In this document: positions 17,763 through 41,967 of the stretch, in pieces
How positions within the stretch are numbered: position 1 is the first letter of the stretch
How the letters are laid out: each line of letters begins with the position of its first letter
IMG/VR virus record: IMGVR_UViG_3300031787_000001
Coordinates: 124,001 to 188,000 of that record
Strand: one strand, 5' to 3'
DNA length: 64,000 nt
Program-made: the position numbers and the translations under genes
The notes under the pieces: generated by a model
Seen by the model: the letters and a program-made list of their open reading frames with translations, nothing else
What the model was told of the DNA's origin: nothing
Database searches by the model: none

Positions 17763-17888
17763 AGTTTTCCGGGTGATCCGGGGTTTACCCGTAAAATTCT
17801 TTAACATAACATTAACATTCGGGTTGATTGTTTTGGGGTGTATAAGGTGTATATTTGTATATCGTTCACAAGTTAAAACTCTACTACT

Positions 17889-18263
17889 ATGTTAAAAAGA
17901 ACTCTCACACTCGGACTTCATCATTGGACTGACAATGACTTAATCCTGAACTTTTATGTTACCAAATTCGGTACTCGGTACATTCATTTGAAAACCGAAG
18001 AAGAACTCTCCAAATTCATCGGTACAACTCCTTGTTCGTTTACCAAACAACAGATGAACTTCCGTTACCTTATGGGGTGTAAATCAAATGTCCTGACTGA
18101 CTACTCCAAACTTCAAAAGTTGGTGTTTGAAATGTTTGATGAAATCTCCTTCTACGAATTTCATCAAATCGTGAAAAAGATAGTTGGACAAGATGAATAC
18201 GAAAGAAATAAATTCTTTGTGGAAAATGGATATAACCCTGAACGAATGATAATGATAAGTTAA
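17889..18263 (+). CDS. Early hypothetical protein; no Ala
   Basis: Promoter upstream, terminator downstream. Confidence 0.8.
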   Translation: MLKRTLTLGLHHWTDNDLILNFYVTKFGTRYIHLKTEEELSKFIGTTPCSFTKQQMNFRYLMGCKSNVLTDYSKLQKLVFEMFDEISFYEFHQIVKKIVGQDEYERNKFFVENGYNPERMIMIS

Positions 18264-18414
18264 TCGGGTTGGAAACTGAAACGAAACCTCAACAGAAATG
18301 TTGGGGTTTTTTATTTCCCACAGAACTCCGTGTTCACCAGATTCGCTGGTGGTAAATTTCTTTGGCTTGTAGAACCAGTTAGAAGATGTGGTTGGGGACA
18401 CCGCATGCGAAAAT

Positions 18415-18475
18415 ATTTCTGTGGCGGTTGTCTTACATAATAGGGGTATTACAGGAGGTTACACGCCAAGGAAAT
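18415..18475. repeat. TGGC inverted element, spacer 39 (extra half-site 18356-18366)
   Basis: ATTTCTGTGGC/GCCAAGGAAAT. Confidence 0.85.
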
Positions 18476-18594
18476 TCCATAATCCCGGATCACCTGTCGT
18501 GTCATCGTATTACACATTCACAAAACTTTAACAAAATAAATTTGGATATAAGGGTATAAATTGGTTAACTTTGACGAAACAAACTTTCAAAGTT

Positions 18595-18876
18595 ATGTCT
18601 TACACAAAAGAAGAAATCAAAATGAACTTGTCAAGAAACCCTAAATGGATAGAAAGAGCGTTGGTTGTCTTACATAACCTCCAAACTACCGAAGAACAAA
18701 TCACAAACGAAACAATCAAAGAGAATGGGGTTGGTTTTAATTCATCGGATAGTCGGTATCTCTCCTATTGTGCGAAATGGATAAAGGGTGGTAATCACTT
18801 AAACGAGAAACACCTCACTAAATGTGGTCAGAAACTCCCAAAGTATTGGAAACAAATACACTCAATGATTAAGTAA
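18595..18876 (+). CDS. Early hypothetical protein
   Basis: ATG downstream of promoter. Confidence 0.8.
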   Translation: MSYTKEEIKMNLSRNPKWIERALVVLHNLQTTEEQITNETIKENGVGFNSSDSRYLSYCAKWIKGGNHLNEKHLTKCGQKLPKYWKQIHSMIK

Positions 18877-18964
18877 CTTCACACTCCACTCAAAACATTA
18901 AACCTCCGATAGTATCGGGGGTTTTTTGTTAGAACTCCGTGTTCACCAGATTCGCTGGTAGATA

Positions 18965-19010
18965 TTTTTTGTGGCGGATAGGTACAGATTAACCTACTCG
19001 CCATGGAAAA
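18965..19010. repeat. TGGC inverted element, spacer 24
   Basis: TTTTTTGTGGC/GCCATGGAAAA. Confidence 0.85.
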
Positions 19011-19128
19011 TTATCCTGATCGCAACAGCGGTTCACGGGGAAAATTCGTTAACAACATTTTAACAATAAAAATTTGGAAATATAAGGTATAATGTCGTAT
19101 ATTTGATAAACAATTAAAAACTACTACA

Positions 19129-19308
19129 ATGGACAAAATCACTCTCACACTCCTTCTCCTTACACTCGGACTAATGGGGTTAACAATGTTATTCTCTCAC
19201 TATATGAGGAATGACAAAATCTCAAACATTTTTCTTCGTGTTTTATTCGGTTTGACAATGATGACATTCACTCTCTTTATGATGGACATTTTTCTCTCAA
19301 ACATTTAA
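19129..19308 (+). CDS. 59-aa two-TM membrane protein (not in ORF track)
   Basis: MDKITLTLLLLTLGLMG.. directly after promoter. Confidence 0.7.
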   Translation: MDKITLTLLLLTLGLMGLTMLFSHYMRNDKISNIFLRVLFGLTMMTFTLFMMDIFLSNI

Positions 19309-19320
19309 TAACTACCAACT

Positions 19321-19659
19321 ATGACACACGAACAACTACACAACTTCGTATCGGAAAAAGGTGAAAGGGAATTTAACCCACAAGAAACCTTACAAGTATT
19401 AACCCACAACAGAACAACATATTGGTCTTGGGGTGTATCTAAACTCCTTAATATGTTTAATAAGGGGTTATGTTTGAAAGTATCAGGACATCACCACAAA
19501 GGTTGGGTAATCATCACACTCGGTTTTACAGACACTTACTCGGTGTTTTATGTATCAAACAATGGTAAAGTCAAAGATGAACAACACTTGGTCTATTTTG
19601 ACGAACTCACCGAAAGGATAGATGATAAAATCGAACGAATACCGATTTACAAACACTAA
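19321..19659 (+). CDS. Early hypothetical protein; no Ala
   Basis: ORF track. Confidence 0.8.
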   Translation: MTHEQLHNFVSEKGEREFNPQETLQVLTHNRTTYWSWGVSKLLNMFNKGLCLKVSGHHHKGWVIITLGFTDTYSVFYVSNNGKVKDEQHLVYFDELTERIDDKIERIPIYKH

Positions 19660-19751
19660 TCACGAAATCGTAATACAGAAACCCTCGACAAAAGTCGGGG
19701 GTTTTTTGTTTTTCCACAGAACTCCGTGTTCACCAGATTCGCTGGTGGTGA

Positions 19752-19805
19752 ATTTATGTGGCGGATCGTATTACAGATAAAGGTGGTATTACACGCCACA
19801 TAAAT
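19752..19805. repeat. TGGC inverted element, spacer 32
   Basis: ATTTATGTGGC/GCCACATAAAT (perfect). Confidence 0.9.
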
Positions 19806-19922
19806 TTTTTGGTTCAGATCCAGGTTTCCACCAGTGAAACTCTTTAACAATAGATTAACAAAATAAATTTGGAATATAAGGTTTAATGATGTATATTTGT
19901 TAAACAATTAAAACATACTACA

Positions 19923-20177
19923 ATGGACAAAAACAAACTAATTAACAGAATTGAAAACATTGGTTTTCTTCTCGGTTGTTTTATCGGTTTATTAACACTT
20001 ATGATGTTGGGGGCGGAACCTACTACTTGGGATGAGGATGGGTTGTACGATTATGAACACCTTTGGGATAAAGGAAATTCGGGTTGGTATGTTATGTGGA
20101 CTTGGGTTTGGTCAGTTGTTACTTTGATTGGGTTGATAGTGGTTAGGTCATTCATTAAGAAAAGTTTAACAAAATAA
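19923..20177 (+). CDS. Small membrane protein
   Basis: Two hydrophobic helices. Confidence 0.75.
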   Translation: MDKNKLINRIENIGFLLGCFIGLLTLMMLGAEPTTWDEDGLYDYEHLWDKGNSGWYVMWTWVWSVVTLIGLIVVRSFIKKSLTK

Positions 20178-20234
20178 ATTTGGTTTTACTCGGTATAAGT
20201 TGTATATTTGTATAAACAATTAAAAACAAAAATT

Positions 20235-20429
20235 ATGAAAAAGTTTTTCAGTTCTATTCTCGGTTTTCACTTGACAATTATGGTTGGGTTGGTTGTTATG
20301 TTTTACTTCAACAACTTGGAAGATAACTACCTAACAATCATTAACAACATTTTCTTGGTTATGATGTCTTTATCCGTTGTGTTATCGGTGGTCTTATGTT
20401 ACTTTGACAAACGAATTTCTAAAAGATAG
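20235..20429 (+). CDS. Small membrane protein
   Basis: Two TM helices; own promoter. Confidence 0.7.
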   Translation: MKKFFSSILGFHLTIMVGLVVMFYFNNLEDNYLTIINNIFLVMMSLSVVLSVVLCYFDKRISKR

Positions 20430-20530
20430 TTGTAGTTTTAATTGTGAACGAAACCACTCCGAAAGGGGTGGTTTTTTTATTTGTGGTATTACACAAAACT
20501 TGAATCGCGGTTCGAGCTGGGATTACACCT

Positions 20531-20576
20531 TTTTCTGTGGCGATCCGTATTACAGAAACCCACTCGCCATAAAAAA
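20531..20576. repeat. TGGC inverted element, spacer 24
   Basis: TTTTCTGTGGC/GCCATAAAAAA. Confidence 0.85.
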
Positions 20577-20683
20577 AGTTTACCAGGACGACAGGTATGA
20601 ATATGGTTTTGAAAAATAAATTTGGAATCAAAAAATATAAGTTGTATATTTGTGTATTATCTAACAAATTAAATTTATATCAA

Positions 20684-21025
20684 ATGAAAGAACAAAATGA
20701 ATGTAATGGAAAAATGTTTCCGAAAGGTTTTTGGTCAAAGAATGGTAAGCCCACACAAAACGCCTTAATGATGTATTTTGTGTATTTGACACATTTACCT
20801 GAAAGTTGGAAAAAGAAAGTAGTACACAAACCCTCACTCGAAAAAACACGACAATACTTTGATGTTGATTATGGTATTGAATGTATGTTAACTTGGGGGA
20901 TACAATTTGGTTGTAAAAATTCTAAAACGTCAGATGAAAGACACCACGCAATGTCTTTGGCTTATCACGACGCTTTGGGTATGATTGGTCAAGGTTACCG
21001 ATACACCGAATTGAAAATTAAGTAG
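20684..21025 (+). CDS. Early hypothetical protein
   Basis: Start reassigned downstream of promoter. Confidence 0.75.
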   Translation: MKEQNECNGKMFPKGFWSKNGKPTQNALMMYFVYLTHLPESWKKKVVHKPSLEKTRQYFDVDYGIECMLTWGIQFGCKNSKTSDERHHAMSLAYHDALGMIGQGYRYTELKIK

Positions 21026-21124
21026 TGTTTGGTTTTAATTGTGAACGAAAAGTCCTCAACGAAAGTTGGGGATTTTTTTTGTCAAGTCACAGACCTCCGT
21101 GTTCACCAGATTCGCTGGTGGACA

Positions 21125-21170
21125 TTTTTTGTGGCTGATCCTATTAGAGAAACCGACAAGCCATAGAAAT
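21125..21170. repeat. TGGC inverted element, spacer 24
   Basis: TTTTTTGTGGC/GCCATAGAAAT. Confidence 0.85.
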
Positions 21171-21278
21171 TTCAGGATGGAAGGTGATCCGAATTCACCT
21201 TCACAAAATTTTAACAAAAAAAATTTGGAATAAGTATGTATATGTTGTATATTTGTATAAATAATTAAAAAAAACATT

Positions 21279-21416
21279 ATGAAAAAGATTTATTCAGTTA
21301 TCGTAGTTATCGTTCTTGTATCATTAACAATGTCCTCTTGTAAAACAAGTGGGTATGGTTGTAAGGGGAAAGAAAGTTGGGGTGGATTGATGAAAAGAAT
21401 TAACAAACCTTATTAG
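21279..21416 (+). CDS. 45-aa lipoprotein (not in ORF track)
   Basis: MKKIYSVIVVIVLVSLTMSS-C lipobox; own promoter and terminator. Confidence 0.7.
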   Translation: MKKIYSVIVVIVLVSLTMSSCKTSGYGCKGKESWGGLMKRINKPY

Positions 21417-21532
21417 TAGTATGGTTGGTTTTAACCCGATGTTTTTACATCGGGTTTTTTATTTTTTTTAACATTTTAGATTTGAAATATAATATTTATT
21501 GTTGTATATTTGTTTAACTAAACCCACTCACT

Positions 21533-21736
21533 ATGAATTTACAATTAAGAACTGAACTAATCGGAAAAAGAATTATGATGATTTTTATGGATGACCCTCA
21601 ACCTATTGAACCAAACACAATGGGTACAATTATCGGAGTTGATGGGTTAAATCAATATCAAGTCAAATGGGATAACGGAAGAAGTTTATCGGTTATACCC
21701 GAAGAAGACCAATTCGTCATTATTGACACAGAGTAG
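21533..21736 (+). CDS. DUF4314-like protein
   Basis: MDDPQPI..GT...VD...QVKWDNGRSL.VIP.ED pattern. Confidence 0.75.
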   Translation: MNLQLRTELIGKRIMMIFMDDPQPIEPNTMGTIIGVDGLNQYQVKWDNGRSLSVIPEEDQFVIIDTE

Positions 21737-21832
21737 TCCGTTCGTTCCCTCATAAAGACAAACCTCAACAGAAATGTTGGGGTTTTTTGTTTCTCCACAG
21801 AACTCCGTGTTCACCATGCTCCCGGTATGTCA

Positions 21833-21878
21833 TTTTCTGTGGCTGATCGTATTACAGGAAGTTAGACGCCAAAGAAAT
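21833..21878. repeat. TGGC inverted element, spacer 24
   Basis: TTTTCTGTGGC/GCCAAAGAAAT. Confidence 0.85.
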
Positions 21879-22270
21879 TTCCAACGACCCGGATCAGGAA
21901 ATCGCCTGTCGGTTATCTTCACAAAGTTTTAACAAAATAAATTTGGAATATAAAGTATAATGATGTATATTTGTTAAACAATTAAAAACTACTACAATGA
22001 AACAAGACAATTCTGACCAATGGATTCAAGGATTAACATTAATAATCTGTTTTATTACACTTGTTATTGTAATCTCCTTAAAGTATTATCTAACGGGTGA
22101 AATCTAAAATAAATTTGGAATATAATAAATAATACCTTATATTTGTGTTATGAAACAGAAATACGAAAATAGATTTTACAAAATTTTACTTTTATTTTGG
22201 ATGATGGTATTCACCTTTGTTTACTTTCAAATAAAATATCAATTAGTTTTCCATTTCTAAAAAACGAAAT

Positions 22271-22423
22271 ATGAAAAATAATTATTTAAGTACAATTAAA
22301 AGAAAGGAACAAGTACAACAAGGAATGTACGATGGTCGTTTCCGTAGTCGTGTGGTGGTAGATAAGAAGAAGAAAGAAAGTAAAAACAAATGTCGTGTTA
22401 AACTTAAAATCAATTATGTATGA
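22271..22423 (+). CDS. 50-aa basic protein (not in ORF track)
   Basis: YDGRFRSRVVVDKKKK; ATGA-coupled to 22420. Confidence 0.6.
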   Translation: MKNNYLSTIKRKEQVQQGMYDGRFRSRVVVDKKKKESKNKCRVKLKINYV

Positions 22424-22629
22424 TACTTGAATTACATTCAGTCGGAAGTGTTATTGACACAGAAACACTATTCACATATCCAATGTTACTAAATGGTGGA
22501 TATGATAAAAATCAAAATGTCCATATTGACGATGTTGATATAGAGTGGTTTCATAGTTTGTCTGATGAAGATTTTGGAACAATAAATGAGTTAATCAATC
22601 AAAGAAACATTAAATCGGAAATAGTATGA
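22420..22629 (+). CDS. Hypothetical protein
   Basis: ORF track. Confidence 0.7.
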   Translation: MILELHSVGSVIDTETLFTYPMLLNGGYDKNQNVHIDDVDIEWFHSLSDEDFGTINELINQRNIKSEIV

Positions 22630-22851
22630 ACAGAGATAGACTAAATAAAATTGAAGAAATTGGTTTTCGTATTACAATGATATTGGTGTTTAGTGTTTTC
22701 ACTATTTGGTTGATTGGAACGATTGTCAAGTTAATAATGATATTGTCGTCATAGTTTAGGTTTGGTTTTAATTGTGAAGAAATCCCTCAACGAAAGTTGG
22801 GGGATTTTCTTTTGGAGGAACTTGAGTCGTGGTTCACCGTGTCTTCAGGGA

Positions 22852-22899
22852 TTTTTTGTGGCTGATCGTATTCAGGTCAACCTCACAAGCCACGGAAAT
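22852..22899. repeat. TGGC inverted element, spacer 26
   Basis: TTTTTTGTGGC/GCCACGGAAAT. Confidence 0.85.
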
Positions 22900-23023
22900 T
22901 TGGTAATCCGAATCACCTGTTTTCCTTCAGGAAATCCTTTCACAAATTTTTAACAAATTATTTTTGGAATAAAAATTTATATGGTGTATATTTGTTATAT
23001 CATTAACAATTAAAACAAACATT

Positions 23024-23191
23024 ATGAAAAAGTTACTTGGTCTTATCGTTATCGTGGTTTTATTTTCTTCTTGTAGTCATTATGTAAACGGAGGTGGTGG
23101 AGGTTGTGGGGTATGGTATCCTCGTAAATTTGAAAAAACAAAGGTGTTCCCTACTCGAAATCATCCAATGTATCGACACTTCGGAGGATAG
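23024..23191 (+). CDS. 55-aa lipoprotein, paralog of 24551 (not in ORF track)
   Basis: MKKLLGLIVIVVLFSS-C..GGGCGVWYPRKFE. Confidence 0.75.
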   Translation: MKKLLGLIVIVVLFSSCSHYVNGGGGGCGVWYPRKFEKTKVFPTRNHPMYRHFGG

Positions 23192-23288
23192 TGTTCTAAA
23201 TAAACCTATCAATAAAAATCCCTGACAATAGTCGGGGATTTTTTTTTCAAACACAAGAAGATGTGATCCGGATCAGCTCGACCGTGGA

Positions 23289-23326
23289 TTTTCTCTGGCT
23301 CAGGTCAACCTACAAGCCAAAGAAAA
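23289..23326. repeat. TGGC inverted element, spacer 16
   Basis: TTTTCTCTGGC/GCCAAAGAAAA. Confidence 0.85.
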
Positions 23327-23461
23327 TTAATAATCCAGATCCCGTCCCTGAAATTTTAACAAAACTTTAACACAAAATCCTTTAACAACATTTTAACAAT
23401 AAAAATTTGGAAATAGGTAGTAATAAGTTGTATATTTGTATAAACAATTAAAACAAATTTT

Positions 23462-23989
23462 ATGAAACAGAAACAAAGAGTATTTGTAACAGAAAGAGAG
23501 TTGTTAATTATCTTAATGAGTATTGACAAACCTACATTCACTCACATTGTATCTAAAACCAAAGTGAGAATGAATAAAGGTGGTAATCCGTATTTTGATA
23601 AAGTTACCAAACACTCAAAAGGTAACTACTTCATCGGTGGTAGTTATGAGGATATGGTAAACACTCGTTGTGTGAAAGAGGGTATTGAACCTAATTTTGA
23701 AAGTCAAGAATGTTCAGTCGGAGAACATATTACCAAGTGTGTTCAGTATAATGAGAACTTACAGAGGTACTATCTTCAATACTTCATCTTCCCTACAAGT
23801 AACATCAAGAGTGAATTTACCTATGAGGGAGATAGTATTGAGAGAGAGTTGTTCCGTAGTTATGAGGTAAAGAGGTCGGAGAGTTCAAGACAACCACAAG
23901 AGAACAAACACAAACCACAATCGTTTATGGTATCTTCCATTGAGGAAATGACACTAAACGGAACGGAATATGTGGTGGTAGGTAGATAA
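23462..23989 (+). CDS. Early hypothetical protein, paralog of 16928..17449; no Ala
   Basis: Full-length similarity. Confidence 0.85.
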   Translation: MKQKQRVFVTERELLIILMSIDKPTFTHIVSKTKVRMNKGGNPYFDKVTKHSKGNYFIGGSYEDMVNTRCVKEGIEPNFESQECSVGEHITKCVQYNENLQRYYLQYFIFPTSNIKSEFTYEGDSIERELFRSYEVKRSESSRQPQENKHKPQSFMVSSIEEMTLNGTEYVVVGR

Positions 23990-24083
23990 GGTATTACACA
24001 ACCGAAATATAAGGTAGTCATTTGACTACCTTTTTTTATGTCCATACCTATCCACGAGTCGTAGACAGAAGACGCGTCCGAAA

Positions 24084-24128
24084 ATTTCTCTGGCGGATCG
24101 GTATTCGTATTACAGGAGCCACGGAAAT
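24084..24128. repeat. TGGC inverted element, spacer 23
   Basis: ATTTCTCTGGC/GCCACGGAAAT. Confidence 0.85.
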
Positions 24129-24250
24129 TTCAACATCTCAGTAGACATCTCCTCGTCATCGTTAAATTCATTATGAAAACATTAACAGAGATTTTTTGGA
24201 GATATAAGGTATTACATAGTATATTTGATAAACAATTAAAAACATATACT

Positions 24251-24472
24251 ATGAACAAAGAAACAATCAAAGTGGTGGTGTGTTATTGTAACTCACTTCC
24301 CAAAGGTTTTATGACACTTCGGAATTTCTTAAACTTTACAAATCGTTCGTGGTGGGATAGTACCAAAACTATTGAGATACCAAAAGAGTATTGGGAGAAT
24401 GTCCACATTGGGAACATAGATAGGTATGTTGAAATGTATGAGAATAACCCTAAGTGGTGGAATGTTGTATAA
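24251..24472 (+). CDS. Hypothetical protein
   Basis: Start downstream of promoter. Confidence 0.7.
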   Translation: MNKETIKVVVCYCNSLPKGFMTLRNFLNFTNRSWWDSTKTIEIPKEYWENVHIGNIDRYVEMYENNPKWWNVV

Positions 24473-24550
24473 ATTTTAACAAATTAAATTTGGAATATAA
24501 ATTTATTTGTTGTATATTTGTTCTATCATTAACAATTAAAACAATACATT

Positions 24551-24745
24551 ATGAAAAAGTTACTCGGTCTTATCGTTGTGGTTATCATCTTTTCAAGTTG
24601 TGGAACAACTTATTACGGAACAAGTGGTGGGAATGGTTGTGGTGTGTGGTTTCCCAAAAAATTTGAAAGGGATAGAAGTCATCAAAGAAGAATGAATTGG
24701 ATAAACAATCCAAATTCGGGTAGGTATCGTAGTGGTGTTCATTAA
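24551..24745 (+). CDS. Small lipoprotein
   Basis: IIFSS-C lipobox; GCGVWFPKKFE. Confidence 0.75.
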   Translation: MKKLLGLIVVVIIFSSCGTTYYGTSGGNGCGVWFPKKFERDRSHQRRMNWINNPNSGRYRSGVH

Positions 24746-24785
24746 AAAAAAATTCTTATCTTCGTTAAACCTTAAATCAATTTTT

Positions 24786-24968: not shown

Positions 24969-25063
24969 TCACTTACCTTTGATAACAAAGTCCTCAACGA
25001 AAGTTGGGGATTTTTTTTGTCCAAAACCCAAGAAGATGTGATCCGGATCAGCTCCATCCGGGA

Positions 25064-34767: not shown

Positions 34768-34870
34768 CAAAACTTTAAGAAAATAAATTTGGAAAACTAA
34801 TATAATAGTTATATCTTTGTTACTCATTACTAATCTAACTCGGGGACAGGAGTTCTGAACAAATTATCTT

Positions 34871-35614
34871 ATGAATAAGTTTCATGGAAAAAAAGTAGGA
34901 GAAATCTTTGAGACAAAAGATTATTCAATTTTCAAATTCAGAGAGGACAATCGTCCAATCATTCCAAACCATGTTAAGAAGTTAGCGAAGAGAATGTCTG
35001 AACGTGGTTGGTTACCAACATCAGTTGTCACTATTAATGGAAGTGGTGATATTATTGATGGACAAAATCGTGTGACCGCAGCGATGAGTGTTGGTTGTCC
35101 GATTCGTTACAAAGTAGTGAAAGGAGCAGGAAGTGATGAAATGACGGAAATGAATACACTACAAAAGAATTGGTCTCCGTTTGACCACTTACACAAGTTC
35201 GTTGTGAAGGGTAATAAGAATTATGTTGTATTCAATAATTTCATTACCGACTATCCAATGTATAAGTACACCGAAGTCGCGATGTTTCTCAACAACTCAA
35301 TGTCAAGTGTGAAGAGAGATACTTTTGAAAGTGGTGAATATGTTGTAAAGAACGAGAAGAAAGCTCGTGAGTGGGCTAACAACATTCTTGAACTCAAACC
35401 TTACTTTGAGAAGTATTACAACAAGTCAATCTTTGTGAGGGCGATGGTGAAGATTATGTCAAATAAGAAAGACTTTGTTTTTGAAGAGTTTTTACACAAA
35501 GTAAAGTTGAGACCAATGAAGTTAGTTCCGTGTGGAACGGTGGAACAATATGTGGAAATGATTGAGGGTATCTACAACTACATGAGAAAGGATAAAGTGA
35601 ATTTAAGGTTTTGA
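34871..35614 (+). CDS. ParB/Srx N-terminal-domain protein
   Basis: NR..HVKKL, IIDGQNRVTAA. Confidence 0.75.
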   Translation: MNKFHGKKVGEIFETKDYSIFKFREDNRPIIPNHVKKLAKRMSERGWLPTSVVTINGSGDIIDGQNRVTAAMSVGCPIRYKVVKGAGSDEMTEMNTLQKNWSPFDHLHKFVVKGNKNYVVFNNFITDYPMYKYTEVAMFLNNSMSSVKRDTFESGEYVVKNEKKAREWANNILELKPYFEKYYNKSIFVRAMVKIMSNKKDFVFEEFLHKVKLRPMKLVPCGTVEQYVEMIEGIYNYMRKDKVNLRF

Positions 35615-35707
35615 GTTAGATAGTAAGTGTGAACAAAGACCACTCCGAAAGGGGTGGTTTTTTTTGTTACGAACTCAGAATCTGCGGTCCTGAAGACGAC
35701 GGGGAAA

Positions 35708-35718
35708 TTTTCTGTGGC
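35708..35718 (+). repeat. Unpaired TGGC half-site
   Basis: TTTTCTGTGGC between terminator and promoter of the wHTH gene. Confidence 0.7.
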
Positions 35719-35800
35719 AGGATCAAACTCTTTAACAAAACATTATGAAAATAAATTTGGAAATAGAAAGTATTATATTGTATATTTGAAAAAAAACATT

Positions 35801-36211
35801 ATGATTGAAATGATTAAATCGGAATTGAAGTGGAGAGGAAAAGAAACCTACTCAATAGAAGAAATTATTGAAGTCATTGAGAAGTATAATAAAAAAGAAG
35901 AAACTCATAGAGTTGAAAGTTGTGGGTTTGTTGCCGATATGGAAACCAGACAAATAACTATTGACGATAAAAAACACAACCTACCAAAAAAAGAATTTTT
36001 GATTATTCATTACCTTATGGAAAATAAAAACAAGGTATTGAATAGAGATAAGATACTAAATAAAATTTGGGAAGATGATGTGATTGTAATAAACAGAACT
36101 ATTGATGTTCACATCAGGAGAATTAGAAATAAATTTCCAACAATTCCAATTAGAACAATTAAGGGAGTTGGATATACTTGGAGTGATAGAGAGACTTTAA
36201 CAAATGTTTAA
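35801..36211 (+). CDS. OmpR/PhoB-type winged-helix DNA-binding protein without receiver domain
   Basis: LPKKEF..L, RDKILNKIW, RTIDVHIRRIR.K, IRTIKGVGY; start reassigned to 35801. Confidence 0.9.
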   Translation: MIEMIKSELKWRGKETYSIEEIIEVIEKYNKKEETHRVESCGFVADMETRQITIDDKKHNLPKKEFLIIHYLMENKNKVLNRDKILNKIWEDDVIVINRTIDVHIRRIRNKFPTIPIRTIKGVGYTWSDRETLTNV

Positions 36212-36267
36212 CATAAATTATTTGGAGGTATAATGTTTTAAGTTGTATATTTGTAAAAATTAAAATT

Positions 36268-38256
36268 ATGGTAACTTTACACGAAGAAAAATTTATGGAC
36301 TATAAAATCGGTTTAGCCGGTTCGTTCAAACAATCACTTTACGAAACCTTTTTCAAAGGAGATACGGAGAACAGAAAGAAGTTAATGTCTGTTTTTCCCG
36401 AACTTGAAGTCGCTCAAAGATACGCCTCCGAAAGTGGTTATTGGAAAGGACTTGTGGAGAGATATAATAAACAATACAACACAAACTATAACCCATAAAA
36501 TAATATGCCAACAAGAGAACAAACAGACAAAGTTTTCACTGAATTGATAAGTTTATATGACATCGCCGATGAACTTGAAAACAATGGCGAAGAAGAAAAA
36601 TCAATCGAAATGAGAATTAAACTCAACATTATCGGACAATTTATTCAATCATTAATAAAATAAAATGAAATCACAACAAGTTTTTATTGTAATGTACAAT
36701 GACCGATATGGTAACGGAGACCAGAAGAAAATAGAGGTGGTATTAAAAGATGAAAAAGATTTTAAGAAGTGGTTGAAGAACCATAACTACGATAGGGATG
36801 CAGAACCCGAAACAAAAGAAGAATTTGATTTAATTCCAGTTAACCTTTTAACTTTTGATTAACGATTATTATATTATCTTTACAAATAAAAAAAATTGTA
36901 TGACAACACAACAATTCAACGAGAAGTACAAAGATTACTTGGAGGAAGGACACTATGGTTTAGCCATAGGTGCTGGAGAATTTGTAGAATGGTTAGATAA
37001 AAAGTTTGAGGACTTTGTTAAGAAACCCGGTTTTAGATTTACACAGATTAAAGCGAAATTCGGTTATGGTAGATTTTACGCCGAAGGTTTAACAAGTGAT
37101 GAAGTTCGTGAAGTGGAACAGAGAATTACAGATTTACATTCAGGTACAAAATTAGAATTTTAATTATGGCAAGAGTATCAAAATTAGCACAAAGACAAAC
37201 CTATTCAAACGGACATCAAATTTGTGTTGGATTGACTGGTGATATTGGTTATATATCTATTGAAGATAATAACCTTTATCCCGAAGGTGATAGTCGAGCA
37301 GATAGAAGGGATATGAATTTTAATAGGATAATGGTTCCCGTTATGACAAGGGAAGACCTTAAAGATTTACAGACCGCTATTGGTGAAGTATTAAAAAACT
37401 CAAAATAATGTCATACACAATAGATAAAATAATTCCAGTCAAATACGAATGGGATGATAAATGGACGGTAACCGCAGATCTTCGTGGACTTGAAACCTTT
37501 GAGAACTGCGAAAGTAATTATGATGTGGTTGAAAGATTAAAAGATAATAATGTCCTTTCAAGTAAAACTAGTGAGGATAGTGAATATTGTCAATTCTTTG
37601 CATATTTCAGTACAAAGAAAGCGGCAGAGAACTTTATCAAAAGATTAGGAACTTATATTGAAAAAAGAAAAAAATTAATATCATCTTTGTAATATGGAAA
37701 TTTTAACATTTAGAGAATGGAGTGAGAACTTTGTAAAAGTTATCTTTGATTTAGAGGGTGGAGTAGAAATCAAATCATTTAACAAAACAATTCTTAAAGT
37801 AAAAACCCCAAAGATTGTTAATGGTTTGTTAGAAGAACAAAGTAAAATGTTGTTGAAACATTACACCGATAACTTTGATAAAATACAAAGTCAGTATCAA
37901 GAATTATTAAACGAAGTTATATGACCGCACACCACATAGCAAAAGTTGTTCAAAGTCAATTCGATAAAGTAGATTTCGACGCCATCATTGATAAGTGGAA
38001 ACACATTAAAAGAGAGGATTGTGGTAGAGTATCAGATGAATGGGTTAATACAAGGATTGATGATAAACAATACTATAAGTGGATGAGGGCGTGTTCCTTA
38101 TTAGAGGAACATATTAAAAGGAACTTTGAAACCTTTGAAGAAACTGAATTGGTTTATACTTGGGCGAAAGACCTTTGTATTCAAAAGAACAATGAATTAA
38201 ATAGGTGGCGTCAGTTTGGTGCGTATCAAACATTTTCTCAATTTAGAAAGAGATAA
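36268..38256 (+). CDS. Operon of small hypothetical ORFs (36268, 36665, 36855, 37166, 37408, 37694, 37921)
   Basis: Tightly packed co-directional ORFs between promoter and terminator. Confidence 0.7.
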
Positions 38257-38350
38257 TATGAGAAACCTAATCTGTACCTTTTTAACCCCGACATAATGTT
38301 GGGGTTTTTTGTTGCTTGAACTTTGCTGGTCCTGTGCGCAACAGGTGAGA

Positions 38351-38387
38351 TATTCTGTGGCAGACTAAACACACTCGCCACAGAAAT
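38351..38387. repeat. TGGC inverted element, spacer 15
   Basis: TATTCTGTGGC/GCCACAGAAAT. Confidence 0.85.
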
Positions 38388-38530
38388 TTCAGATGACCGG
38401 GGTCAGGACAGTTTCAGGGTAAAACTATTTATATCTGTTAAGAAAATTTTAACAAAATAAATTTGGAAATACAAAGAAATAAGTTGTATATTTGTAATGT
38501 CATTTAATTATTAACTCAAAACTTTTTCAA

Positions 38531-38800
38531 ATGAAAAGTAAAGTAAAAAAACAAAAACACACCCTACTCAAAGGAGAGGGAGCAAACCAACACACTCTTT
38601 ACGGAGAGTTTAAGATTGATGAAGAAAAGTCCTTTGCAACATTGGAAGTAACAAAGGATAGTGTATTAAAACACGAACAACCTGACGGAAGTTTCTCAAA
38701 CGAACATCAAGCCTTAAAGATTGACAAAGGTAATTGGGTTATGGGAAAACAAGTTGAGTACAATCCGTTTTCTCGTTCAGTAAGTCAAGTTTGGGACTAA
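38531..38800 (+). CDS. Small His-containing hypothetical protein
   Basis: L.GEG..H, LKHE, EH..L.I..G.W....Q.EY.P. Confidence 0.7.
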   Translation: MKSKVKKQKHTLLKGEGANQHTLYGEFKIDEEKSFATLEVTKDSVLKHEQPDGSFSNEHQALKIDKGNWVMGKQVEYNPFSRSVSQVWD

Positions 38801-38826
38801 TTTATTCACACACTAAATCAACTCAA

Positions 38827-39231
38827 ATGGCAAATCCGTTAATTCATTCTAAATCCAGTGTTAAACGCTGGGGTGGAAAGGTAGAAGATTATTTACCTAT
38901 TCACGAACTTATTGATAGTCCAAAAATGACTATGAATAATAATAGTGCGAGGTTACTTACTCACAATACCTGGTTCGCATACCACATTGTTCCGAAAATC
39001 TTTGGTTACAACATTGTTAATTCTGACGGAAAGTCCGTTGATGTTGTAGATATTGCGATGTTACATATTGCAGAAGATTTCCGAATGAAGTTTGTACCGA
39101 CACCACAGGACTATCTTAAACATTTAGAAGTCCAACCCTGGATGAATAATGGAGTTAAGCCCGTTGATAATCCCGAAGCGTACGAAATTGTTAAAAACTT
39201 AAATCAAAAATTACACGATTATGCAAACTAA
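38827..39231 (+). CDS. DUF6915-like protein
   Basis: P..H..SS.KRWGG..EDY..IH; HIAEDF. Confidence 0.7.
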   Translation: MANPLIHSKSSVKRWGGKVEDYLPIHELIDSPKMTMNNNSARLLTHNTWFAYHIVPKIFGYNIVNSDGKSVDVVDIAMLHIAEDFRMKFVPTPQDYLKHLEVQPWMNNGVKPVDNPEAYEIVKNLNQKLHDYAN

Positions 39232-39901
39232 TGAAGCAGTAAAACTCTGGAAGGAGTTAGGTATTACACACGCAAATATGGAGTTCAGTTGTGGTGGAGA
39301 TAGTATGAATGACTACCACTTTACTTTCTACAAGAAAAACGATAGTAAGAAAAAGAATGTCCCCGAAGAAATTGAGGTTAATAGTCCCGAATTGGAAAGT
39401 TACTTTGACAAAGAAGTGTTTGATGAAGTTGAGTTTTATGTAAACTCTGACGGACACTACATTGGGGAGCACGGAAATGTTTATATTGAATTAGATGATA
39501 GTGATGAAGATGAAGAAGAACATACTTTCATTTATTCAAAAAGTGCCAAAAGTGAGTGGTCGGAGAGAATTGAAGAAACAATGGAAATCAAATTATCAAA
39601 GAAGATGTCTAAATTTGTTTCGGAGTATGTTAGTAACATTAACGGAGAAGAAGGGAATTGTACTATCAATTTCAAAAAAGATTTCATAATGTCTGACGAA
39701 CAAGAAAAGTTGGTGGGAGAATTGGAAGAAATTGTATTACAAGAAACCGCAGACTTTGAGCCTTCCTATGATGAAGGGGAGAAAGAAGATTACTATACTT
39801 TCACAACAAATGACGGAGATGATAGAGAAGAATTAACTATCAAAGATGATAAGTTGTTGGTATCTGTTGGAACTTCGTTTATCATTTACAAAGAAGATTA
39901 A
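39221..39901 (+). CDS. Acidic DUF6878-like protein
   Basis: FSCGGDS motif. Confidence 0.55.
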   Translation: MQTNEAVKLWKELGITHANMEFSCGGDSMNDYHFTFYKKNDSKKKNVPEEIEVNSPELESYFDKEVFDEVEFYVNSDGHYIGEHGNVYIELDDSDEDEEEHTFIYSKSAKSEWSERIEETMEIKLSKKMSKFVSEYVSNINGEEGNCTINFKKDFIMSDEQEKLVGELEEIVLQETADFEPSYDEGEKEDYYTFTTNDGDDREELTIKDDKLLVSVGTSFIIYKED

Positions 39902-39929
39902 ATTATTAACAAATTAAATTAAATCAGTT

Positions 39930-40601
39930 ATGCAAATCGTTATCAATAATTTACAATTTCCGTATGACATTGGTTGTCGTATTTTGAAAGTGAAACACAA
40001 AGATTGTCCTTTCAGTCAGTTGGAAGATATTTGGGAAGATATTACCCCGATTACTTTCAAAGAGATAGCCCAATTAGAGAACTTGGAACAACGCCGTGTG
40101 GCTATGTTGAACTATGGGTTAGATAGATTGGTCAAAGAGATTAAACCCGAATTGATTGATAAGAAAACATTGAAGAAAACAACAACTTGGGTTAGTCAAG
40201 ACGGACAACTTGTTACCAAAAAATTCAATGACACTTATGAACTTTACAAAGTTAATGGGGAAGTTTTCGGTAAGGCTCGTAATTCTTGGTCAAAACCTGA
40301 TGATTGTTACTATGTAAAGTGTAAGGACACAAGTACCGACAGAGAGTATTTCATTTGGGTTGATATGAAAAGTGTGGCAAACACAAATGGTCAGGGTTGG
40401 AATTGGGATATTAAAAAGGTCAATGCAATTCAGGCAATTGCTTGGACTATTCAAACGGACATTCCCGAAGGTTGTATTGAGAAGATTGTAAGACAGGGAG
40501 ATTGTGTGTTGATTAAACCGATAGGGAAGAAAGTAAAGTCGGAAAGTACAAGACACTTAACGGAAAGTGAGTACAAAAATCTGTTGGTCGCTGAGAGTTA
40601 G
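39930..40601 (+). CDS. DUF6745-like protein
   Basis: NLEQRRV, C.DTSTDREY..WV, AIAWT, RQGD. Confidence 0.6.
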   Translation: MQIVINNLQFPYDIGCRILKVKHKDCPFSQLEDIWEDITPITFKEIAQLENLEQRRVAMLNYGLDRLVKEIKPELIDKKTLKKTTTWVSQDGQLVTKKFNDTYELYKVNGEVFGKARNSWSKPDDCYYVKCKDTSTDREYFIWVDMKSVANTNGQGWNWDIKKVNAIQAIAWTIQTDIPEGCIEKIVRQGDCVLIKPIGKKVKSESTRHLTESEYKNLLVAES

Positions 40602-40689
40602 TAGTTTTTGACAAATGAAAGGGGGTACAATTAGTACCCCTTTTTTTATGCACTTTTTGTGCACTCGATCTGCATATTAACAGGTGAGA

Positions 40690-40726
40690 TTTTCTGTGGC
40701 GGATCAACTATACTCGCCACAGAAAA
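40690..40726. repeat. TGGC inverted element, spacer 15
   Basis: TTTTCTGTGGC/GCCACAGAAAA. Confidence 0.9.
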
Positions 40727-40835
40727 TTCTTGGTTCAGATCCTGAAATTTTTAGATATAATATCTTAACTAAACTTTAACGAAAATAAATTTGGAATCAA
40801 AATATATAAGTTGTATATTTGTAAAAATTAAAATT

Positions 40836-41600
40836 ATGATTTACACAACTAAAGCTCAAGCAAAAAAATTAACGGGTATCGGTTACCTGGGGTCGGTTAA
40901 CTTAACTACCAAACATCAGAAGGCGTACAAGTACAATGAACTTACTTATAGTTTATACCTCGCACCCGCAAAGTCAAGTGGTTATGAGGTTTGTCCTATG
41001 AGAAGTGAAGAATGTACATTGCTATGTTTGAACGAATCGGGAATGAATAAAATGACACAGAAGGTAAAGGGTGATGTTATTAATGAATCTAGAATTAAAA
41101 AAACGAAATTATTCTTTGAACACAGGGAATTTTTTGTTAATTGGATGATAGATGAAATATACACCGCAAAGAAAAAGGCAGATAAACTCGGTCACAAGTT
41201 CAGTGTTCGTTTAAACAATACATCAGATATAACCCCCGAAAGTTTTTATGTGACATATAAAGGAGAAGTGAGAAATGTATTACAGATTTTCCCCGATGTT
41301 AAATTTTACGATTACACGAAAGTTCCGAAACGAATTGAATTGTTAAAGAAGTACAATAACTACGATTTAACATTTTCATTTAGTGGATATAACTTTCCCG
41401 ATTGTATTAGTATGTTGAATAATGATGTTAGAGTGGCGGTCGTATTTAGAAAAGAATTACCCGAAACTTTCTGGGGTCGTAAAGTTATTGACGGGGATGA
41501 ATACGATATGAGATACTACGATGAAAAAAATGTTATTGTAGGTTTGAAATATAAAAGTGTTAGAAACAAGTTAAAGGATGATTACAAGTTCGTTGTTTAG
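40836..41600 (+). CDS. Phage GP88-like protein
   Basis: LYLAPA, VCP..C..CL, VRLN.TSDI, FYDYTK, IDGD..D.R. Confidence 0.7.
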   Translation: MIYTTKAQAKKLTGIGYLGSVNLTTKHQKAYKYNELTYSLYLAPAKSSGYEVCPMRSEECTLLCLNESGMNKMTQKVKGDVINESRIKKTKLFFEHREFFVNWMIDEIYTAKKKADKLGHKFSVRLNNTSDITPESFYVTYKGEVRNVLQIFPDVKFYDYTKVPKRIELLKKYNNYDLTFSFSGYNFPDCISMLNNDVRVAVVFRKELPETFWGRKVIDGDEYDMRYYDEKNVIVGLKYKSVRNKLKDDYKFVV

Positions 41601-41690
41601 TAGTTTTTGTTTTGATAGAGAACCCACCAGTAAAATGGTGGGTTTTTTATTGCTGTTACCAGAGCAGATCGCAGCGCAAAGCACAGTGGA

Positions 41691-41835
41691 ATTTCTGTGG
41701 CAGAATAGTTTTATTGATTATCAATGAGTTATGAAAATAGCAAAAGTTGCAAAAGTTGCAGCAACACCAGAGCAAGTTGCCAGATTCAGAGCTATGGATT
41801 TTCTGTGGCAGACATTTGTATTACGCCACAGAATA
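41691..41835. repeat. Expanded element: half-site 41691-41701 plus pair 41799-41835 (spacer 15)
   Basis: TTTTCTGTGGC/GCCACAGAATA. Confidence 0.85.
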
Positions 41836-41967
41836 TTTTTACCGTGCCGGGCTGGGGTCGTGATCAAAAATATTTTTGCAAAATTTTAACAAAATATATT
41901 TGGATTATAACTTTATCCGTTGTATATTTGTGATGTCATTAATTATTAAACTCTAAATTTTATTAAC

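What the first reader, a model, noticed from the sequence alone, without database searches (positions are those of the whole stretch)
17770..41870. Restriction-site-like words concentrated in the non-coding spacers
Seen (manual): ~39 GATC in ~3 kb of spacer elements against ~4 in the other ~22 kb of 16.9-41.9 kb; GATC is common again left of 16.7 kb and right of ~43.8 kb. Spacers also stack AGCT, GCGC, CGCG, CCGG, TCGA, GCWGC, TCCGGA, CTTCAG, GGTGA, GAAGA (e.g. agctcgatcgcagcgcgcaacagctc at ~30276; gatccggatcagctc at ~23265 and ~25040). GATC directly follows the left arm in about 13 elements. Inference: (a) sacrificial/decoy sites placed so cuts leave each promoter-gene-terminator unit intact, with arms oriented toward the break as a Chi-like or end-protection signal; (b) sites tolerated only under a protective protein footprint; or (c) a methylation-state sensor for early transcription.
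Basis: partly seen in the sequence, partly recalled or inferred. Interest (0 to 1): 0.85.

Follow-up and report, generated by a model that had tools for sequence, protein, structure and literature searches.

The report
GATC kept only in phage early-gene spacers
In the early-gene block of an uncultured 287-kb phage of Bacteroidota, short restriction-type palindromes have been scrubbed from the DNA, except that GATC survives and is enriched only inside a repeated terminator-to-promoter spacer cassette, which looks like a selected regulatory signal and not a decoy.

Summary
The counts are right. There are 39 GATC in 22 long spacers, 4 in the rest of 16.9-41.9 kb, and 13 directly after the left arm.

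Against matched nulls:
- GATC is 7-9 times depleted in the 58 early genes (6 vs 41-54).
- It is absent from promoter, leader and terminator DNA (0 vs 7.7).
- It is 3 times enriched in the ~3.2 kb of non-transcribed spacer cores (38 vs 12.5; 21 of 22 cores).
- It is at expectation outside the block (101 vs 98).

The other "restriction words" are not enriched. ACGT, CATG, CTAG, GGCC, TGCA and TCGA are purged from the cores too (16 vs 60). CTTCAG and GGTGA are strand-specific cassette motifs.

The spacers are copies of one cassette: terminator, inverted repeat with a CGTATTACA loop, then a Bacteroidota-type promoter. About 40 related metagenomic loci share it. One clade has no GATC at all. The other clade keeps the pattern of gene-poor, core-rich GATC. 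Other lineages have erased CATG or ACGT.

Best reading: restriction-site avoidance focused on the early block, with GATC kept as a selected cis-signal of the cassette. It may be methylation-read, but that is untested. The decoy and footprint ideas are contradicted.

The parts
16700..43800 (.). Early-gene block, which is also the palindrome-avoidance domain. It holds about 58 small + strand genes and one divergent - strand gene (16928-17473).
   Evidence: In sliding windows, CATG+ACGT+TCGA observed/expected is 0.05-0.4 here and 0.5-1.1 outside. In the codon shuffle the five most depleted 4-mers in the early CDS are all palindromes. The Bacteroidota-type promoter motif occurs 35 times on the + strand inside and 2 times outside.
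17535..17800 (+). Spacer core 1 (divergent promoter region); 1 GATC at 17775
18313..18513 (+). Spacer core 2; left arm TGTGGC at 18420; 1 GATC (18488, post-arm)
18928..19044 (+). Spacer core 3; left arm at 18970; 1 GATC (19018, post-arm)
19708..19839 (+). Spacer core 4; arms TTTATGTGGC/GCCACATAAA (compensated pair); GATC at 19764 (loop start) and 19817 (post-arm)
   Evidence: DNA hairpin -11.9 kcal/mol, z -4.3
20479..20592 (+). Spacer core 5; left arm at 20536; GATC 20542 (loop start)
21081..21195 (+). Spacer core 6; left arm at 21130; GATC 21137 (loop) and 21186 (post-arm)
21789..21913 (+). Spacer core 7; left arm at 21838; GATC 21845 (loop) and 21892 (post-arm, GATCAGG)
22858..22934 (+). Spacer core 8; left arm at 22857; GATC 22864 (loop)
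23248..23377 (+). Spacer core 9; pre-arm palindrome TGATCCGGATCA (23265/23271); post-arm GATC 23338
24038..24166 (+). Spacer core 10; GATC 24096 (loop start, followed by GTATTCGTATTACA)
25019..25142 (+). Spacer core 11; pre-arm TGATCCGGATCA (25040/25046); loop GATC 25076
25920..26046 (+). Spacer core 12; loop GATC 25987
26743..27005 (+). Spacer core 13 (long, with a second terminator); GATC 26830 (pre-arm) and 26851 (loop); degenerate right arm
   Evidence: this copy does not fold better than shuffles
28466..28584 (+). Spacer core 14; loop GATC 28527
29302..29425 (+). Spacer core 15; GATC 29341 (pre-arm) and 29398/29404 (post-arm TGATCCGGATCA)
30261..30386 (+). Spacer core 16; GATC 30280 (pre-arm) and 30378/30383 (post-arm)
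31717..31850 (+). Spacer core 17; arms TTTTCTGTGGC/GCCACAGAAA; GATC 31734 (pre-arm) and 31841 (post-arm)
33057..33169 (+). Spacer core 18; GATC 33074 (pre-arm), 33112 (loop) and 33143 (post-arm)
   Evidence: hairpin -10.2 kcal/mol, z -6.0
35666..35727 (+). Spacer core 19 (truncated: left arm only, at 35713); GATC 35721
38284..38433 (+). Spacer core 20; intact arms; the only core without GATC
40610..40761 (+). Spacer core 21; GATC 40667 (pre-arm), 40702 (loop) and 40738 (post-arm)
   Evidence: hairpin -13.8 kcal/mol, z -6.8
41609..41870 (+). Spacer core 22 (two left arms, at 41696 and 41804); GATC 41667 and 41862
27726..27796 (+). Example of the promoter module: TTAACAAAA-type A/T repeats, then -33 TTTGG, then about 19 nt, then -7 TATATTTG. 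It recurs more than 30 times, immediately 3' of each core or alone before genes.
   Evidence: Repeat families D1-D7. The motif matches the Bacteroidota sigma-A consensus TTTG / TAnnTTTG (established knowledge).

Best explanation
Shown. The window comes from an uncultured phage with a circular map of about 287 kb. The stretch 16.7-43.8 kb is its early block. It holds about 58 small genes in about 30 units, each driven by a Bacteroidota host-type promoter. Twenty-two units are separated by copies of one composite cassette. The cassette runs: intrinsic terminator, then a non-transcribed core of about 130 nt, then an A/T-rich upstream tract, then the promoter. The core carries an inverted repeat (TTTCTGTGGC / GCCACAGAAA) around a loop that usually holds CGTATTACA. 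It also carries a post-arm motif, (GA or CT)TCAGG. The block is scrubbed of 4-bp palindromes in genes and in cores alike. Relatives have erased different words: GATC, CATG or ACGT. GATC is the single exception. It is nearly absent from everything that is transcribed or promoter DNA, yet it is 3 times over-represented in the cores. It sits in three slots: before the left arm, at the start of the loop, and after the right arm.

Inferred. (1) The palindrome purge is restriction-site avoidance concentrated on the early block, which is probably the first part to enter and be expressed. This matches what is documented for the T5 first-step-transfer region and for the leading region of Autographiviridae. 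(2) GATC in the cores is not tolerated junk or a decoy. It is a positively maintained cis-signal of the cassette. It beats its own one-mismatch neighbours 3:1. It is present in 21 of 22 cores. It is kept across a deep clade in which coding GATC is purged. It is lost only where GATC is erased from all sequence examined, at least 36 kb and extending past the early block, so it is useful but dispensable. (3) The most likely reader of GATC as such is a methylation-linked one: host Dam-type or phage methylation marking the DNA upstream of the early promoters. I put this last step at about 35-40%. It is not shown. The cassettes also behave like T4-type PeSL elements, as recombination joints for shuffling gene units.
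For: Counts and nulls. Domain limits.

Cassette anatomy and hairpin capacity. Terminators number 35 vs 8.9 expected. The promoter motif occurs 35 times inside the block and 2 times outside.

Not an assembly artefact: the same sequence is present in five IMG/VR contigs and one JGI contig.

Family evidence:
- GATC 0 of 25-51 expected in L017-L020, CATG 0 of 47 in L022, CTAG 3 of 28 in L023.
- Across 38 loci GATC is either absent, or CDS-poor (O/E 0.04-0.7) with non-coding DNA at 0.75-2.2.
- Core-only O/E is 2-3 in every lineage that has GATC.
- 129 of 170 cores have at least one GATC, vs about 39% expected.
- In the tree, one deep GATC-null clade plus L044 stands apart from a second clade that carries the gene-poor, core-rich state throughout.
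- The null state continues at least 8 kb past the last early promoter.

Co-variation: the arms change with compensation between lineages (GGC/GCC, CGC/GCG, TTTGCA/TGCTAAA) while the loop motif stays.

Shuffling: cassettes are reshuffled between the window and a relative with 92% identity in the DUF932 protein.

Literature: PMC10644984, PMC12455610, PMC2839356.
Against: No Dam, SeqA-like, MutH/Sau3AI-like or nickase gene was found among about 58 window proteins scanned. The only methylase is a compact C5 enzyme nearest to DNMT3 catalytic domains, and its target is unknown.

GATC positions vary from about -30 to -190 relative to the -33 element, and the flanks vary. This is unlike classical Dam-regulated operators.

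The 38 sites are not independent. They fall into roughly 10-15 homologous groups, and the cassettes evolve in concert, so part of the enrichment could be descent plus gene conversion.

If hosts cut GATC efficiently, keeping 38 sites in the block would cancel the benefit of purging the coding sites. The model therefore needs a low per-site hazard (a kinetic race) or a separate cause for the coding depletion.

That the block enters the cell first is only an inference. The assemblies close into a circle, so the genome ends are unknown. GATC avoidance ends at about 43.8 kb inside an operon, not at a cassette boundary.
Confidence: 0.55

Rival explanations
1. Descent and concerted evolution only. 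The ancestral cassette happened to contain 2-3 GATC. Duplication and gene conversion among about 22 copies keep re-installing them faster than weak anti-GATC selection can remove them, whereas single-copy coding sites are purged one by one. GATC has no function.
For: Sites fall in three homologous slots. All copies in a genome change their arms together, for example GGC/GCC in the window vs CGC/GCG in L036. Core content of other words is also all-or-none by lineage: CATG at the loop/arm junction in L036, TGCA inside the arm in L080/L084. Orthologous cores of the window and L036 differ in which slots hold GATC.
Against: GATC is created in at least three different motif contexts (GATC-GTATTACA, GATCAGG, GATCGCAGC/TGATCCGGATCA) with varied flanks. 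It exceeds every one-mismatch neighbour 3:1, both in the window and in 139 cores of 17 other loci. Tandem GATCAG triplets occur in L051. 21 of 22 cores carry at least one. The state is stable across a deep clade.
Confidence: 0.2
2. Signal confinement by a factor acting on the injected DNA. GATC is where parental DNA is nicked, bound or otherwise marked. Such marks block host RNA polymerase, so they are excluded from every early transcription unit, useful or harmless in non-transcribed cores, and irrelevant for late genes read from replicated DNA.
For: This single cause explains all three compartments: early transcribed DNA including leaders and terminators 0-0.15 times, cores 3 times, late region 1.0 times. 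T5-like phages carry site-specific nicks (PMC10644984).
Against: No nickase or GATC-binding gene was found in the window. The distal part of the last + strand operon (43.8-46 kb) has normal GATC. The other four top-depleted words are palindromes purged from the cores too, so a DNA-level restriction explanation already covers the coding depletion.
Confidence: 0.1
3. Relic. The lineage recently left a GATC-restricting host. Fast-evolving spacers have regained GATC, and slowly evolving coding DNA has not yet.
For: There is a continuum of coding O/E (0.04-0.7) among lineages that have GATC, while non-coding DNA is always at 0.75 or above.
Against: The gene-poor, core-rich state is found throughout a deep clade whose members differ by 30-40% in a conserved protein. 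Synonymous sites are therefore saturated, and a relic would have decayed. Cores are 3 times above expectation, not at expectation, and above their neighbour words.
Confidence: 0.05
4. Decoy or sacrificial sites, or a protective protein footprint over the spacers.
For: GATC is enriched in non-transcribed DNA between intact promoter-gene-terminator units.
Against: Six other palindromes are purged from the same cores (16 vs 59.6). The GATC-null clade has removed spacer GATC as well. CATG-null and ACGT-null lineages likewise have none in their spacers. The arms are symmetric.
Confidence: 0.04
5. RNA-level selection. GAUC is avoided in early mRNAs (for example as the target of a host endoribonuclease) and is free to occur in untranscribed cores.
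For: Depletion covers coding DNA plus leaders, short intercistronic gaps and terminators, and spares only untranscribed DNA.
Against: It does not explain 3-fold enrichment in the cores. In the null clade GATC is removed from untranscribed cores too. The word is a DNA palindrome like the four other top-depleted words. Genes at 43.8-46 kb in the same operon carry GATC.
Confidence: 0.04

Closest known systems
PeSL (promoter-early stem-loop) cassettes of T4-type phages (PMC2839356, PMC4122927)
   Same: Repeated composite elements made of a strong host-type early promoter with an A/T-rich upstream tract plus a terminator stem-loop. They flank small orphan genes in a hyperplastic region. Close relatives differ by insertion, deletion and relocation of gene units at these elements (window vs L036).
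   Different: There is no sequence relation. The promoter is of the Bacteroidota type, not the sigma-70 type. Here a core of about 130 nt with a co-evolving inverted repeat, a CGTATTACA loop and GATC slots lies between terminator and promoter. Mini-circles were not tested.
Restriction-site avoidance confined to the first-entering region (T5/BF23 first-step-transfer DNA, PMC10644984; Autographiviridae leading region, PMC12455610)
   Same: Site depletion is strong in one early block of about 27 kb (about 9% of the genome) and weak or absent elsewhere. The set of erased sites differs between close lineages.
   Different: Entry order and two-step injection are unknown here. One word (GATC) is kept, and enriched, inside the same block. 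No known anti-restriction family was recognised among the early proteins.
GATC clusters read through Dam methylation (P1 pac TGATCA/G hexamers, Mu mom upstream sites, oriC/SeqA, pap and agn43); from general knowledge
   Same: Several GATC, often as TGATCA, GGATCA or tandem GATCAG, are clustered in non-coding regulatory DNA. GATC itself, not a longer word, is the common denominator.
   Different: No Dam, SeqA or other reader was found. Spacing to promoter elements is not fixed. The signal is repeated before about 22 promoters. Whole lineages do without it.
Counter-selection of GATC in enterobacterial phages such as T7 (from general knowledge)
   Same: Strong under-representation of GATC in phage DNA.
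   Different: There it is genome-wide and ascribed to Dam and MutH. Here it is limited to the early block, with the opposite sign in the spacer cores. Bacteroidota are not known to use MutH.

Membership tests
PeSL-like composite regulatory cassette | Strong host-RNA-polymerase early promoter with an A/T-rich upstream tract, repeated many times | tested here: met
   More than 30 copies of TTTGG-N(about 19)-TATATTTG with TTAACAAAA repeats upstream. 35 on the + strand in the block vs 2 outside. That host RNA polymerase uses them is inferred from the consensus.
PeSL-like composite regulatory cassette | Adjacent stem-loop acting as terminator | tested here: met
   35 terminator-like sites vs 8.9 in shuffles. 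The strong ones lie on the + strand just after gene ends. Activity was not assayed.
PeSL-like composite regulatory cassette | Elements are joints of modular shuffling between relatives | tested here: met
   Window vs L036: units relocated (DUF932 unit, gene 41968-42423) and units present or absent, with block edges at the spacers.
PeSL-like composite regulatory cassette | Formation of excised mini-circles | not testable with these tools
   Needs inverse PCR or read-level data.
PeSL-like composite regulatory cassette | Sequence or lineage relation to T4-type PeSLs | tested here: not met
   No similarity to any deposited phage. Different promoter type. So this is an analogue, not a member.
Leading-region restriction avoidance (T5 FST type) | Recognition-site depletion confined to the early region | tested here: met
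   For example ACGT O/E is 0.06 in early CDS vs 0.55 outside. GATC is 0.14 vs 1.03.
Leading-region restriction avoidance (T5 FST type) | Erased sites differ between lineages (host-driven) | tested here: met
   GATC-null, CATG-null and ACGT-null lineages.
Leading-region restriction avoidance (T5 FST type) | The region enters the cell first, before protective functions act | not testable with these tools
   The assemblies close into a circle (286,785 and 286,787 nt with different start points). The termini are unknown.
Leading-region restriction avoidance (T5 FST type) | The region encodes anti-restriction functions | tested here: inconclusive
   DUF932, ParB-like, SprT-like and GP88 proteins and many orphans. 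No recognised anti-restriction family.
Dam/GATC methylation-sensing regulatory cluster | GATC over-represented in non-coding regulatory DNA | tested here: met
   38 vs 12.5 in the cores. Neighbour words are at about 1 times. 2-3 times in all relatives that have GATC.
Dam/GATC methylation-sensing regulatory cluster | A GATC methylase acts on the DNA | not testable with these tools
   None is encoded in the 64 kb. The host and the rest of the genome were not available. No methylation data.
Dam/GATC methylation-sensing regulatory cluster | Sites overlap a promoter element or a defined operator at fixed position | tested here: not met
   Sites lie about 30-190 nt upstream of the -33 element at variable distance and with variable flanks.
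Known structured RNA families (Rfam 15) | Match above the gathering score | tested here: not met
   No match in the whole window. No tRNA either.

The most novel reading that the evidence does not exclude
GATC in the non-transcribed cores is an epigenetic or physical mark, either methylation state or a site-specific nick or bound factor. It would be read on the injected parental DNA of a widespread family of freshwater Bacteroidota jumbo phages. It would insulate or time some 20-30 early units, and it would have to be kept out of every early transcript. Lineages whose hosts cut GATC have re-engineered the cassette to work without it.
Probability: 0.25. Interest if true: 0.8.

Novelty: new variant of a known kind. 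Interest (0 to 1): 0.58.

Why it matters
The region combines two known themes in an unstudied, abundant group of uncultured jumbo phages. The themes are repeated promoter-terminator cassettes and restriction avoidance focused on the early region. It adds something not described to my knowledge: one restriction-type word whose selection has opposite signs in adjacent compartments of the same block, conserved across a deep clade and erased in its sister clade.

This gives a natural experiment of about 40 lineages. It could be used to link phage sequence to the restriction and methylation repertoire of unknown hosts. It could also be used to test whether GATC methylation regulates phage early transcription outside the enterobacteria.

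The co-evolving inverted repeat with the invariant CGTATTACA loop is an unassigned cis-element that is likely to have a dedicated binding protein.

Tried and rejected
- Similarity to deposited phages. Megablast found nothing. Protein-level hits were only remote.
- Rfam and tRNA scans found nothing.
- The exact-arm pattern search in viral contigs returned only identical copies of the same phage plus unrelated hits.
- Relatives were sought through the methylase, the 326-aa protein and the 480-aa protein. These gave only self hits or a distant phage (L119) without the cassette block.
- Gene presence or absence against GATC state. Several small orphan genes track the state, but this is confounded by phylogeny, because the null loci form one clade. 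Dropped.
- Co-evolution of the phage wHTH protein (35801-36211) with the arms. It has homologues only in L017/L044, so no test was possible.
- Methylase specificity. The nearest solved relatives are DNMT3 catalytic domains, then M.HhaI. Nothing about GATC can be inferred.
- Pre-arm and post-arm GATC as an outer stem around the inverted repeat. This is true for one element (29302-29425) only.
- Max-order Markov expectations. They were misleading for TGCA, because its trinucleotides are themselves depleted, so I relied on codon and dinucleotide shuffles.
- The GATC-rich stretch at 45-47.6 kb matches its local trinucleotide expectation (23 vs 21) and is not special.
- GGCC, CCGG and GCGC excesses of about 2 times in some relatives' cores can be explained by G+C heterogeneity within the cores. 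I did not count them as signal.

Full report
**Source and context**

The window has 31.5% G+C. It is identical to parts of five IMG/VR contigs and one JGI contig. Two of these assemblies are 286,785 and 286,787 nt long with different start points, so the map is circular and about 287 kb. No deposited phage is similar at the DNA level, and protein matches are remote.

Genes left of 16.6 kb and right of 49.5 kb are mostly on the - strand. From 17.9 to about 49 kb they are on the + strand. Between 17.5 and 43.1 kb a motif recurs more than 30 times: TTTGG, about 19 nt, then TATATTTG, preceded by TTAACAAAA-type repeats. It matches the Bacteroidota sigma-A consensus (-33 TTTG, -7 TAnnTTTG; established knowledge). 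It occurs 35 times on the + strand inside the block and twice outside. Terminator-like hairpins are four times more frequent than in shuffles, and the strong ones follow gene ends. I read this as a host-transcribed early block. That reading is inference from the consensus and the layout.

**The observation**

I curated 58 early genes (18.4 kb) and 22 long spacers. GATC occurs 39 times in the long spacers, 6 times in the genes and never in the 27 short gaps. All 39 lie in or at the edge of the cores, meaning the stretch between the terminator T-run and the promoter's A/T tract (3,160 nt, 43% G+C). Thirteen start 0-2 nt after the left arm.

Against nulls:

| Compartment | Observed | Expected | Source |
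|---|---|---|---|
| Early genes | 6 | 41.5 (synonymous-codon shuffle, z -7.0), 51 (codon-order shuffle), 54 (Markov) | |
| Cores | 38 | 12.5 (dinucleotide shuffle, z 7.7) | |
| Other non-coding DNA of the block (3,985 nt) | 0 | 7.7 (P 5e-4) | |
| Genes outside the block | 101 | 97.8 | |

The density ratio of cores to genes is 37.

**The other words**

In the cores AGCT, GCGC, CGCG, CCGG, GCWGC and GAAGA are within about 2.5 sd of expectation, and TCGA is depleted. CTTCAG (7 of 8 on the + strand) and GGTGA/TCACC are enriched, but they are pieces of cassette motifs. GTATTACA occurs 11 times.

In the early genes the five most depleted of all 256 tetramers are palindromes: ACGT 3 vs 52, TCGA 14 vs 58, CATG 6 vs 41, GATC 6 vs 41 and TATA 63 vs 107. 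The avoidance domain runs from about 16.5 to 43.5 kb. Outside it depletion is mild. The cores share the purge: ACGT, CATG, CTAG, GGCC, TGCA and TCGA together are 16 vs 59.6 (z -6.3). So the spacers are exposed to the same selection as the genes, and GATC is the one exception.

**Anatomy of the spacer**

Each long spacer has, in order:
- an intrinsic terminator;
- a variable pre-arm segment, in three sub-families;
- the left arm, (A)TTTTCTGTGGC;
- a loop of 11-39 nt, often N-GATC-(C/G)GTATTACA;
- the right arm, GCCACAGAAA(T);
- a post-arm segment;
- the promoter module.

As single strands the arms fold into hairpins of 10-13 bp. Energies are -8 to -14 kcal/mol and z-scores are -2.5 to -6.8. A degenerate copy does not fold. 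There is no Rfam match.

**Relatives**

The DUF932 protein (30835-31668) retrieved 7 diverged viral loci and 80 metagenomic loci, at 61-92% identity. All have the same cassette layout.

The arms co-vary:
- TGTGGC/GCCACA in the window;
- TGTCGC/GCGACA in L036, a compensated change in all copies;
- TTGTTTGGC/GCCAAACAA in many lineages;
- TTGGTTGGC/GCCAACCAA in L021;
- TTAGTTTGCA/TGCTAAACTAA in L080 and L084.

The loop keeps CGTAT(T/G)ACA throughout, and loop length ranges from 3 to about 60 nt. This fits a hairpin, or a symmetric protein site whose specificity co-evolves. I cannot tell which.

**Palindromes across the family**

- GATC is 0 of 25-51 expected in L017-L020. CATG is 0 of 47 in L022.
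- Over 38 loci of at least 7 kb, GATC is either totally absent (16 loci) or coding-poor (O/E 0.04-0.7) with non-coding DNA at 0.75-2.2.
- CATG is absent in L103, L104 and L108. ACGT is absent in L090.
- In cores alone GATC is 2-3 times expectation in every lineage that has it. Examples are 21 vs 8, 25 vs 8 and 16 vs 7.
- 129 of 170 cores hold at least one GATC, vs about 39% expected.
- In 139 cores of 17 other loci GATC is 181 vs 60, while its six neighbour-word pairs are at 0.5-1.2 times. In null-clade cores AATC/GATT and GACC/GGTC are slightly raised.
- On a DUF932 tree the null loci form one deep clade plus L044. The coding-poor, core-rich state is spread over the whole second clade.
- In the null clade GATC stays at zero for at least 8 kb beyond the last early promoter. 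The purge there extends beyond the block and may be genome-wide. In the window's phage it is not.

**What this excludes**

- A general shield or footprint over the cores, and harmless or sacrificial cutting there. Both predict tolerance of other palindromes and retention of GATC under strong GATC pressure. Both predictions fail.
- A relic of a past purge. The state is stable across lineages that differ by 30-40% in a conserved protein, and the cores are above expectation, not at it.
- RNA-level selection. It does not explain the enrichment, or the removal of GATC from untranscribed cores in the null clade.

**What remains**

The coding depletion is most simply the same restriction avoidance as for ACGT, CATG and TCGA. 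It is focused on the early block, as in T5/BF23 first-step-transfer DNA (PMC10644984) and the leading region of Autographiviridae (PMC12455610). GATC in the cores is maintained against that pressure. This could be through function, through concerted evolution of the roughly 22 copies, or both.

Several observations make me favour selection for GATC as such, at about 55%:
- the neighbour-word test;
- the near-universal presence in cores;
- the several distinct contexts in which GATC is formed;
- the tandem GATCAG repeats in L051.

The best-known way to read GATC as such in regulatory DNA is methylation, as at P1 pac, Mu mom and oriC/SeqA (general knowledge). It is untested here. No Dam-type enzyme or reader is encoded in the 64 kb. 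The only methylase (45110-46027) is a compact C5 enzyme closest to DNMT3 catalytic domains. The sites have no fixed spacing to the promoter.

One quantitative caveat applies. Keeping 38 sites makes sense only if the per-site hazard is low during a short exposed period, or if a different GATC-specific factor (a nick or a roadblock on parental DNA) drives the coding depletion. That second possibility is the most novel reading I cannot exclude.

**The cassettes as recombination joints**

Between the window and L036 (92% identity in DUF932), gene units are relocated, present or absent, with edges at the spacers. This matches what is described for PeSL cassettes of T4-type phages (PMC2839356). The resemblance is functional, not by descent.

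**Verdict**

The core observation is real and highly non-random, but it holds only for GATC. The decoy and footprint interpretations are contradicted. The methylation idea survives as the leading but unproven mechanism. The finding is a new variant of two known kinds of system, in an uncultured and apparently widespread phage family.

Noticed in passing
window 16700-16870: An unusual element made of C-runs followed by G-runs. It lies between the terminator of gene 16928-17473 (-) and the start of gene 15166-16608 (-), exactly at the left edge of the palindrome-avoidance domain. It is conserved in relative L020 (about 1180-1400). It could be a genome end, a packaging or entry signal, or an origin.
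   Followed up: partly
window 45110-46027 (+): A compact C5 cytosine DNA methyltransferase (PF00145, TIGR00675). Its nearest solved relatives are DNMT3A/3B catalytic domains, ahead of M.HhaI. It lies 1.3 kb past the point where GATC becomes common again. Its target is unknown, and it was not found in the diverged relatives.
   Followed up: partly
window 35801-36211 (+): An early phage gene for a PhoB/OmpR-type winged-helix DNA-binding domain without a receiver domain. It is a candidate binder of cassette elements. A homologue (52% identity) is found only in L017/L044.
   Followed up: partly
window 30835-31668, 32306-32767, 34871-35614, 40836-41600: The early block encodes DUF932, SprT-like metalloprotease, ParB-like and GP88-family proteins. 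This set is reminiscent of the leading regions of conjugative elements (from memory). No recognised anti-restriction family was hit.
   Followed up: partly
window 21279-21416, 23024-23191, 24551-24745, 27442-27729, 31928-32113: Five small paralogous genes whose N-termini look like lipoprotein signals (MKK...L...SSC), each in its own cassette (repeat family D16).
   Followed up: no
window 16500-30000 vs 30000-43000: TGCA is completely absent from the first half of the early block (genes and spacers) but present in the second half. This suggests sub-domains with different histories.
   Followed up: no
relatives L022, L103, L104, L108 (CATG); L090 (ACGT); L023 (CTAG): Lineage-specific complete erasure of other 4-bp palindromes over 10-20 kb, including the spacers. 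This could serve as a fingerprint of host restriction systems.
   Followed up: partly
L051 about 9880-9905 and about 13250-13280: Tandem GATCAG repeats (three in a row) in the post-arm slot just upstream of the promoter A/T tract.
   Followed up: no
window 47987-48149: A 161-nt insertion/deletion polymorphism between otherwise identical assemblies of the same phage (L011 vs the window).
   Followed up: no
window 41601-41967: This spacer holds two left arms or inverted-repeat copies and a short GCAAAAGTTGCA repeat. An ORF of 69 codons (41724-41933) runs through it and is probably spurious.
   Followed up: no
window 2612-3790 (-), 2082-2603 (-), 14068-15117 (-), 55179-55700 (-), 57313-59177 (-): Outside the block: a tRNA nucleotidyltransferase next to an HD-domain protein, an HNH endonuclease, a HAD domain of the RNA-repair type, and two nucleotide-sugar epimerases. 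There are no tRNA genes in the window.
   Followed up: no
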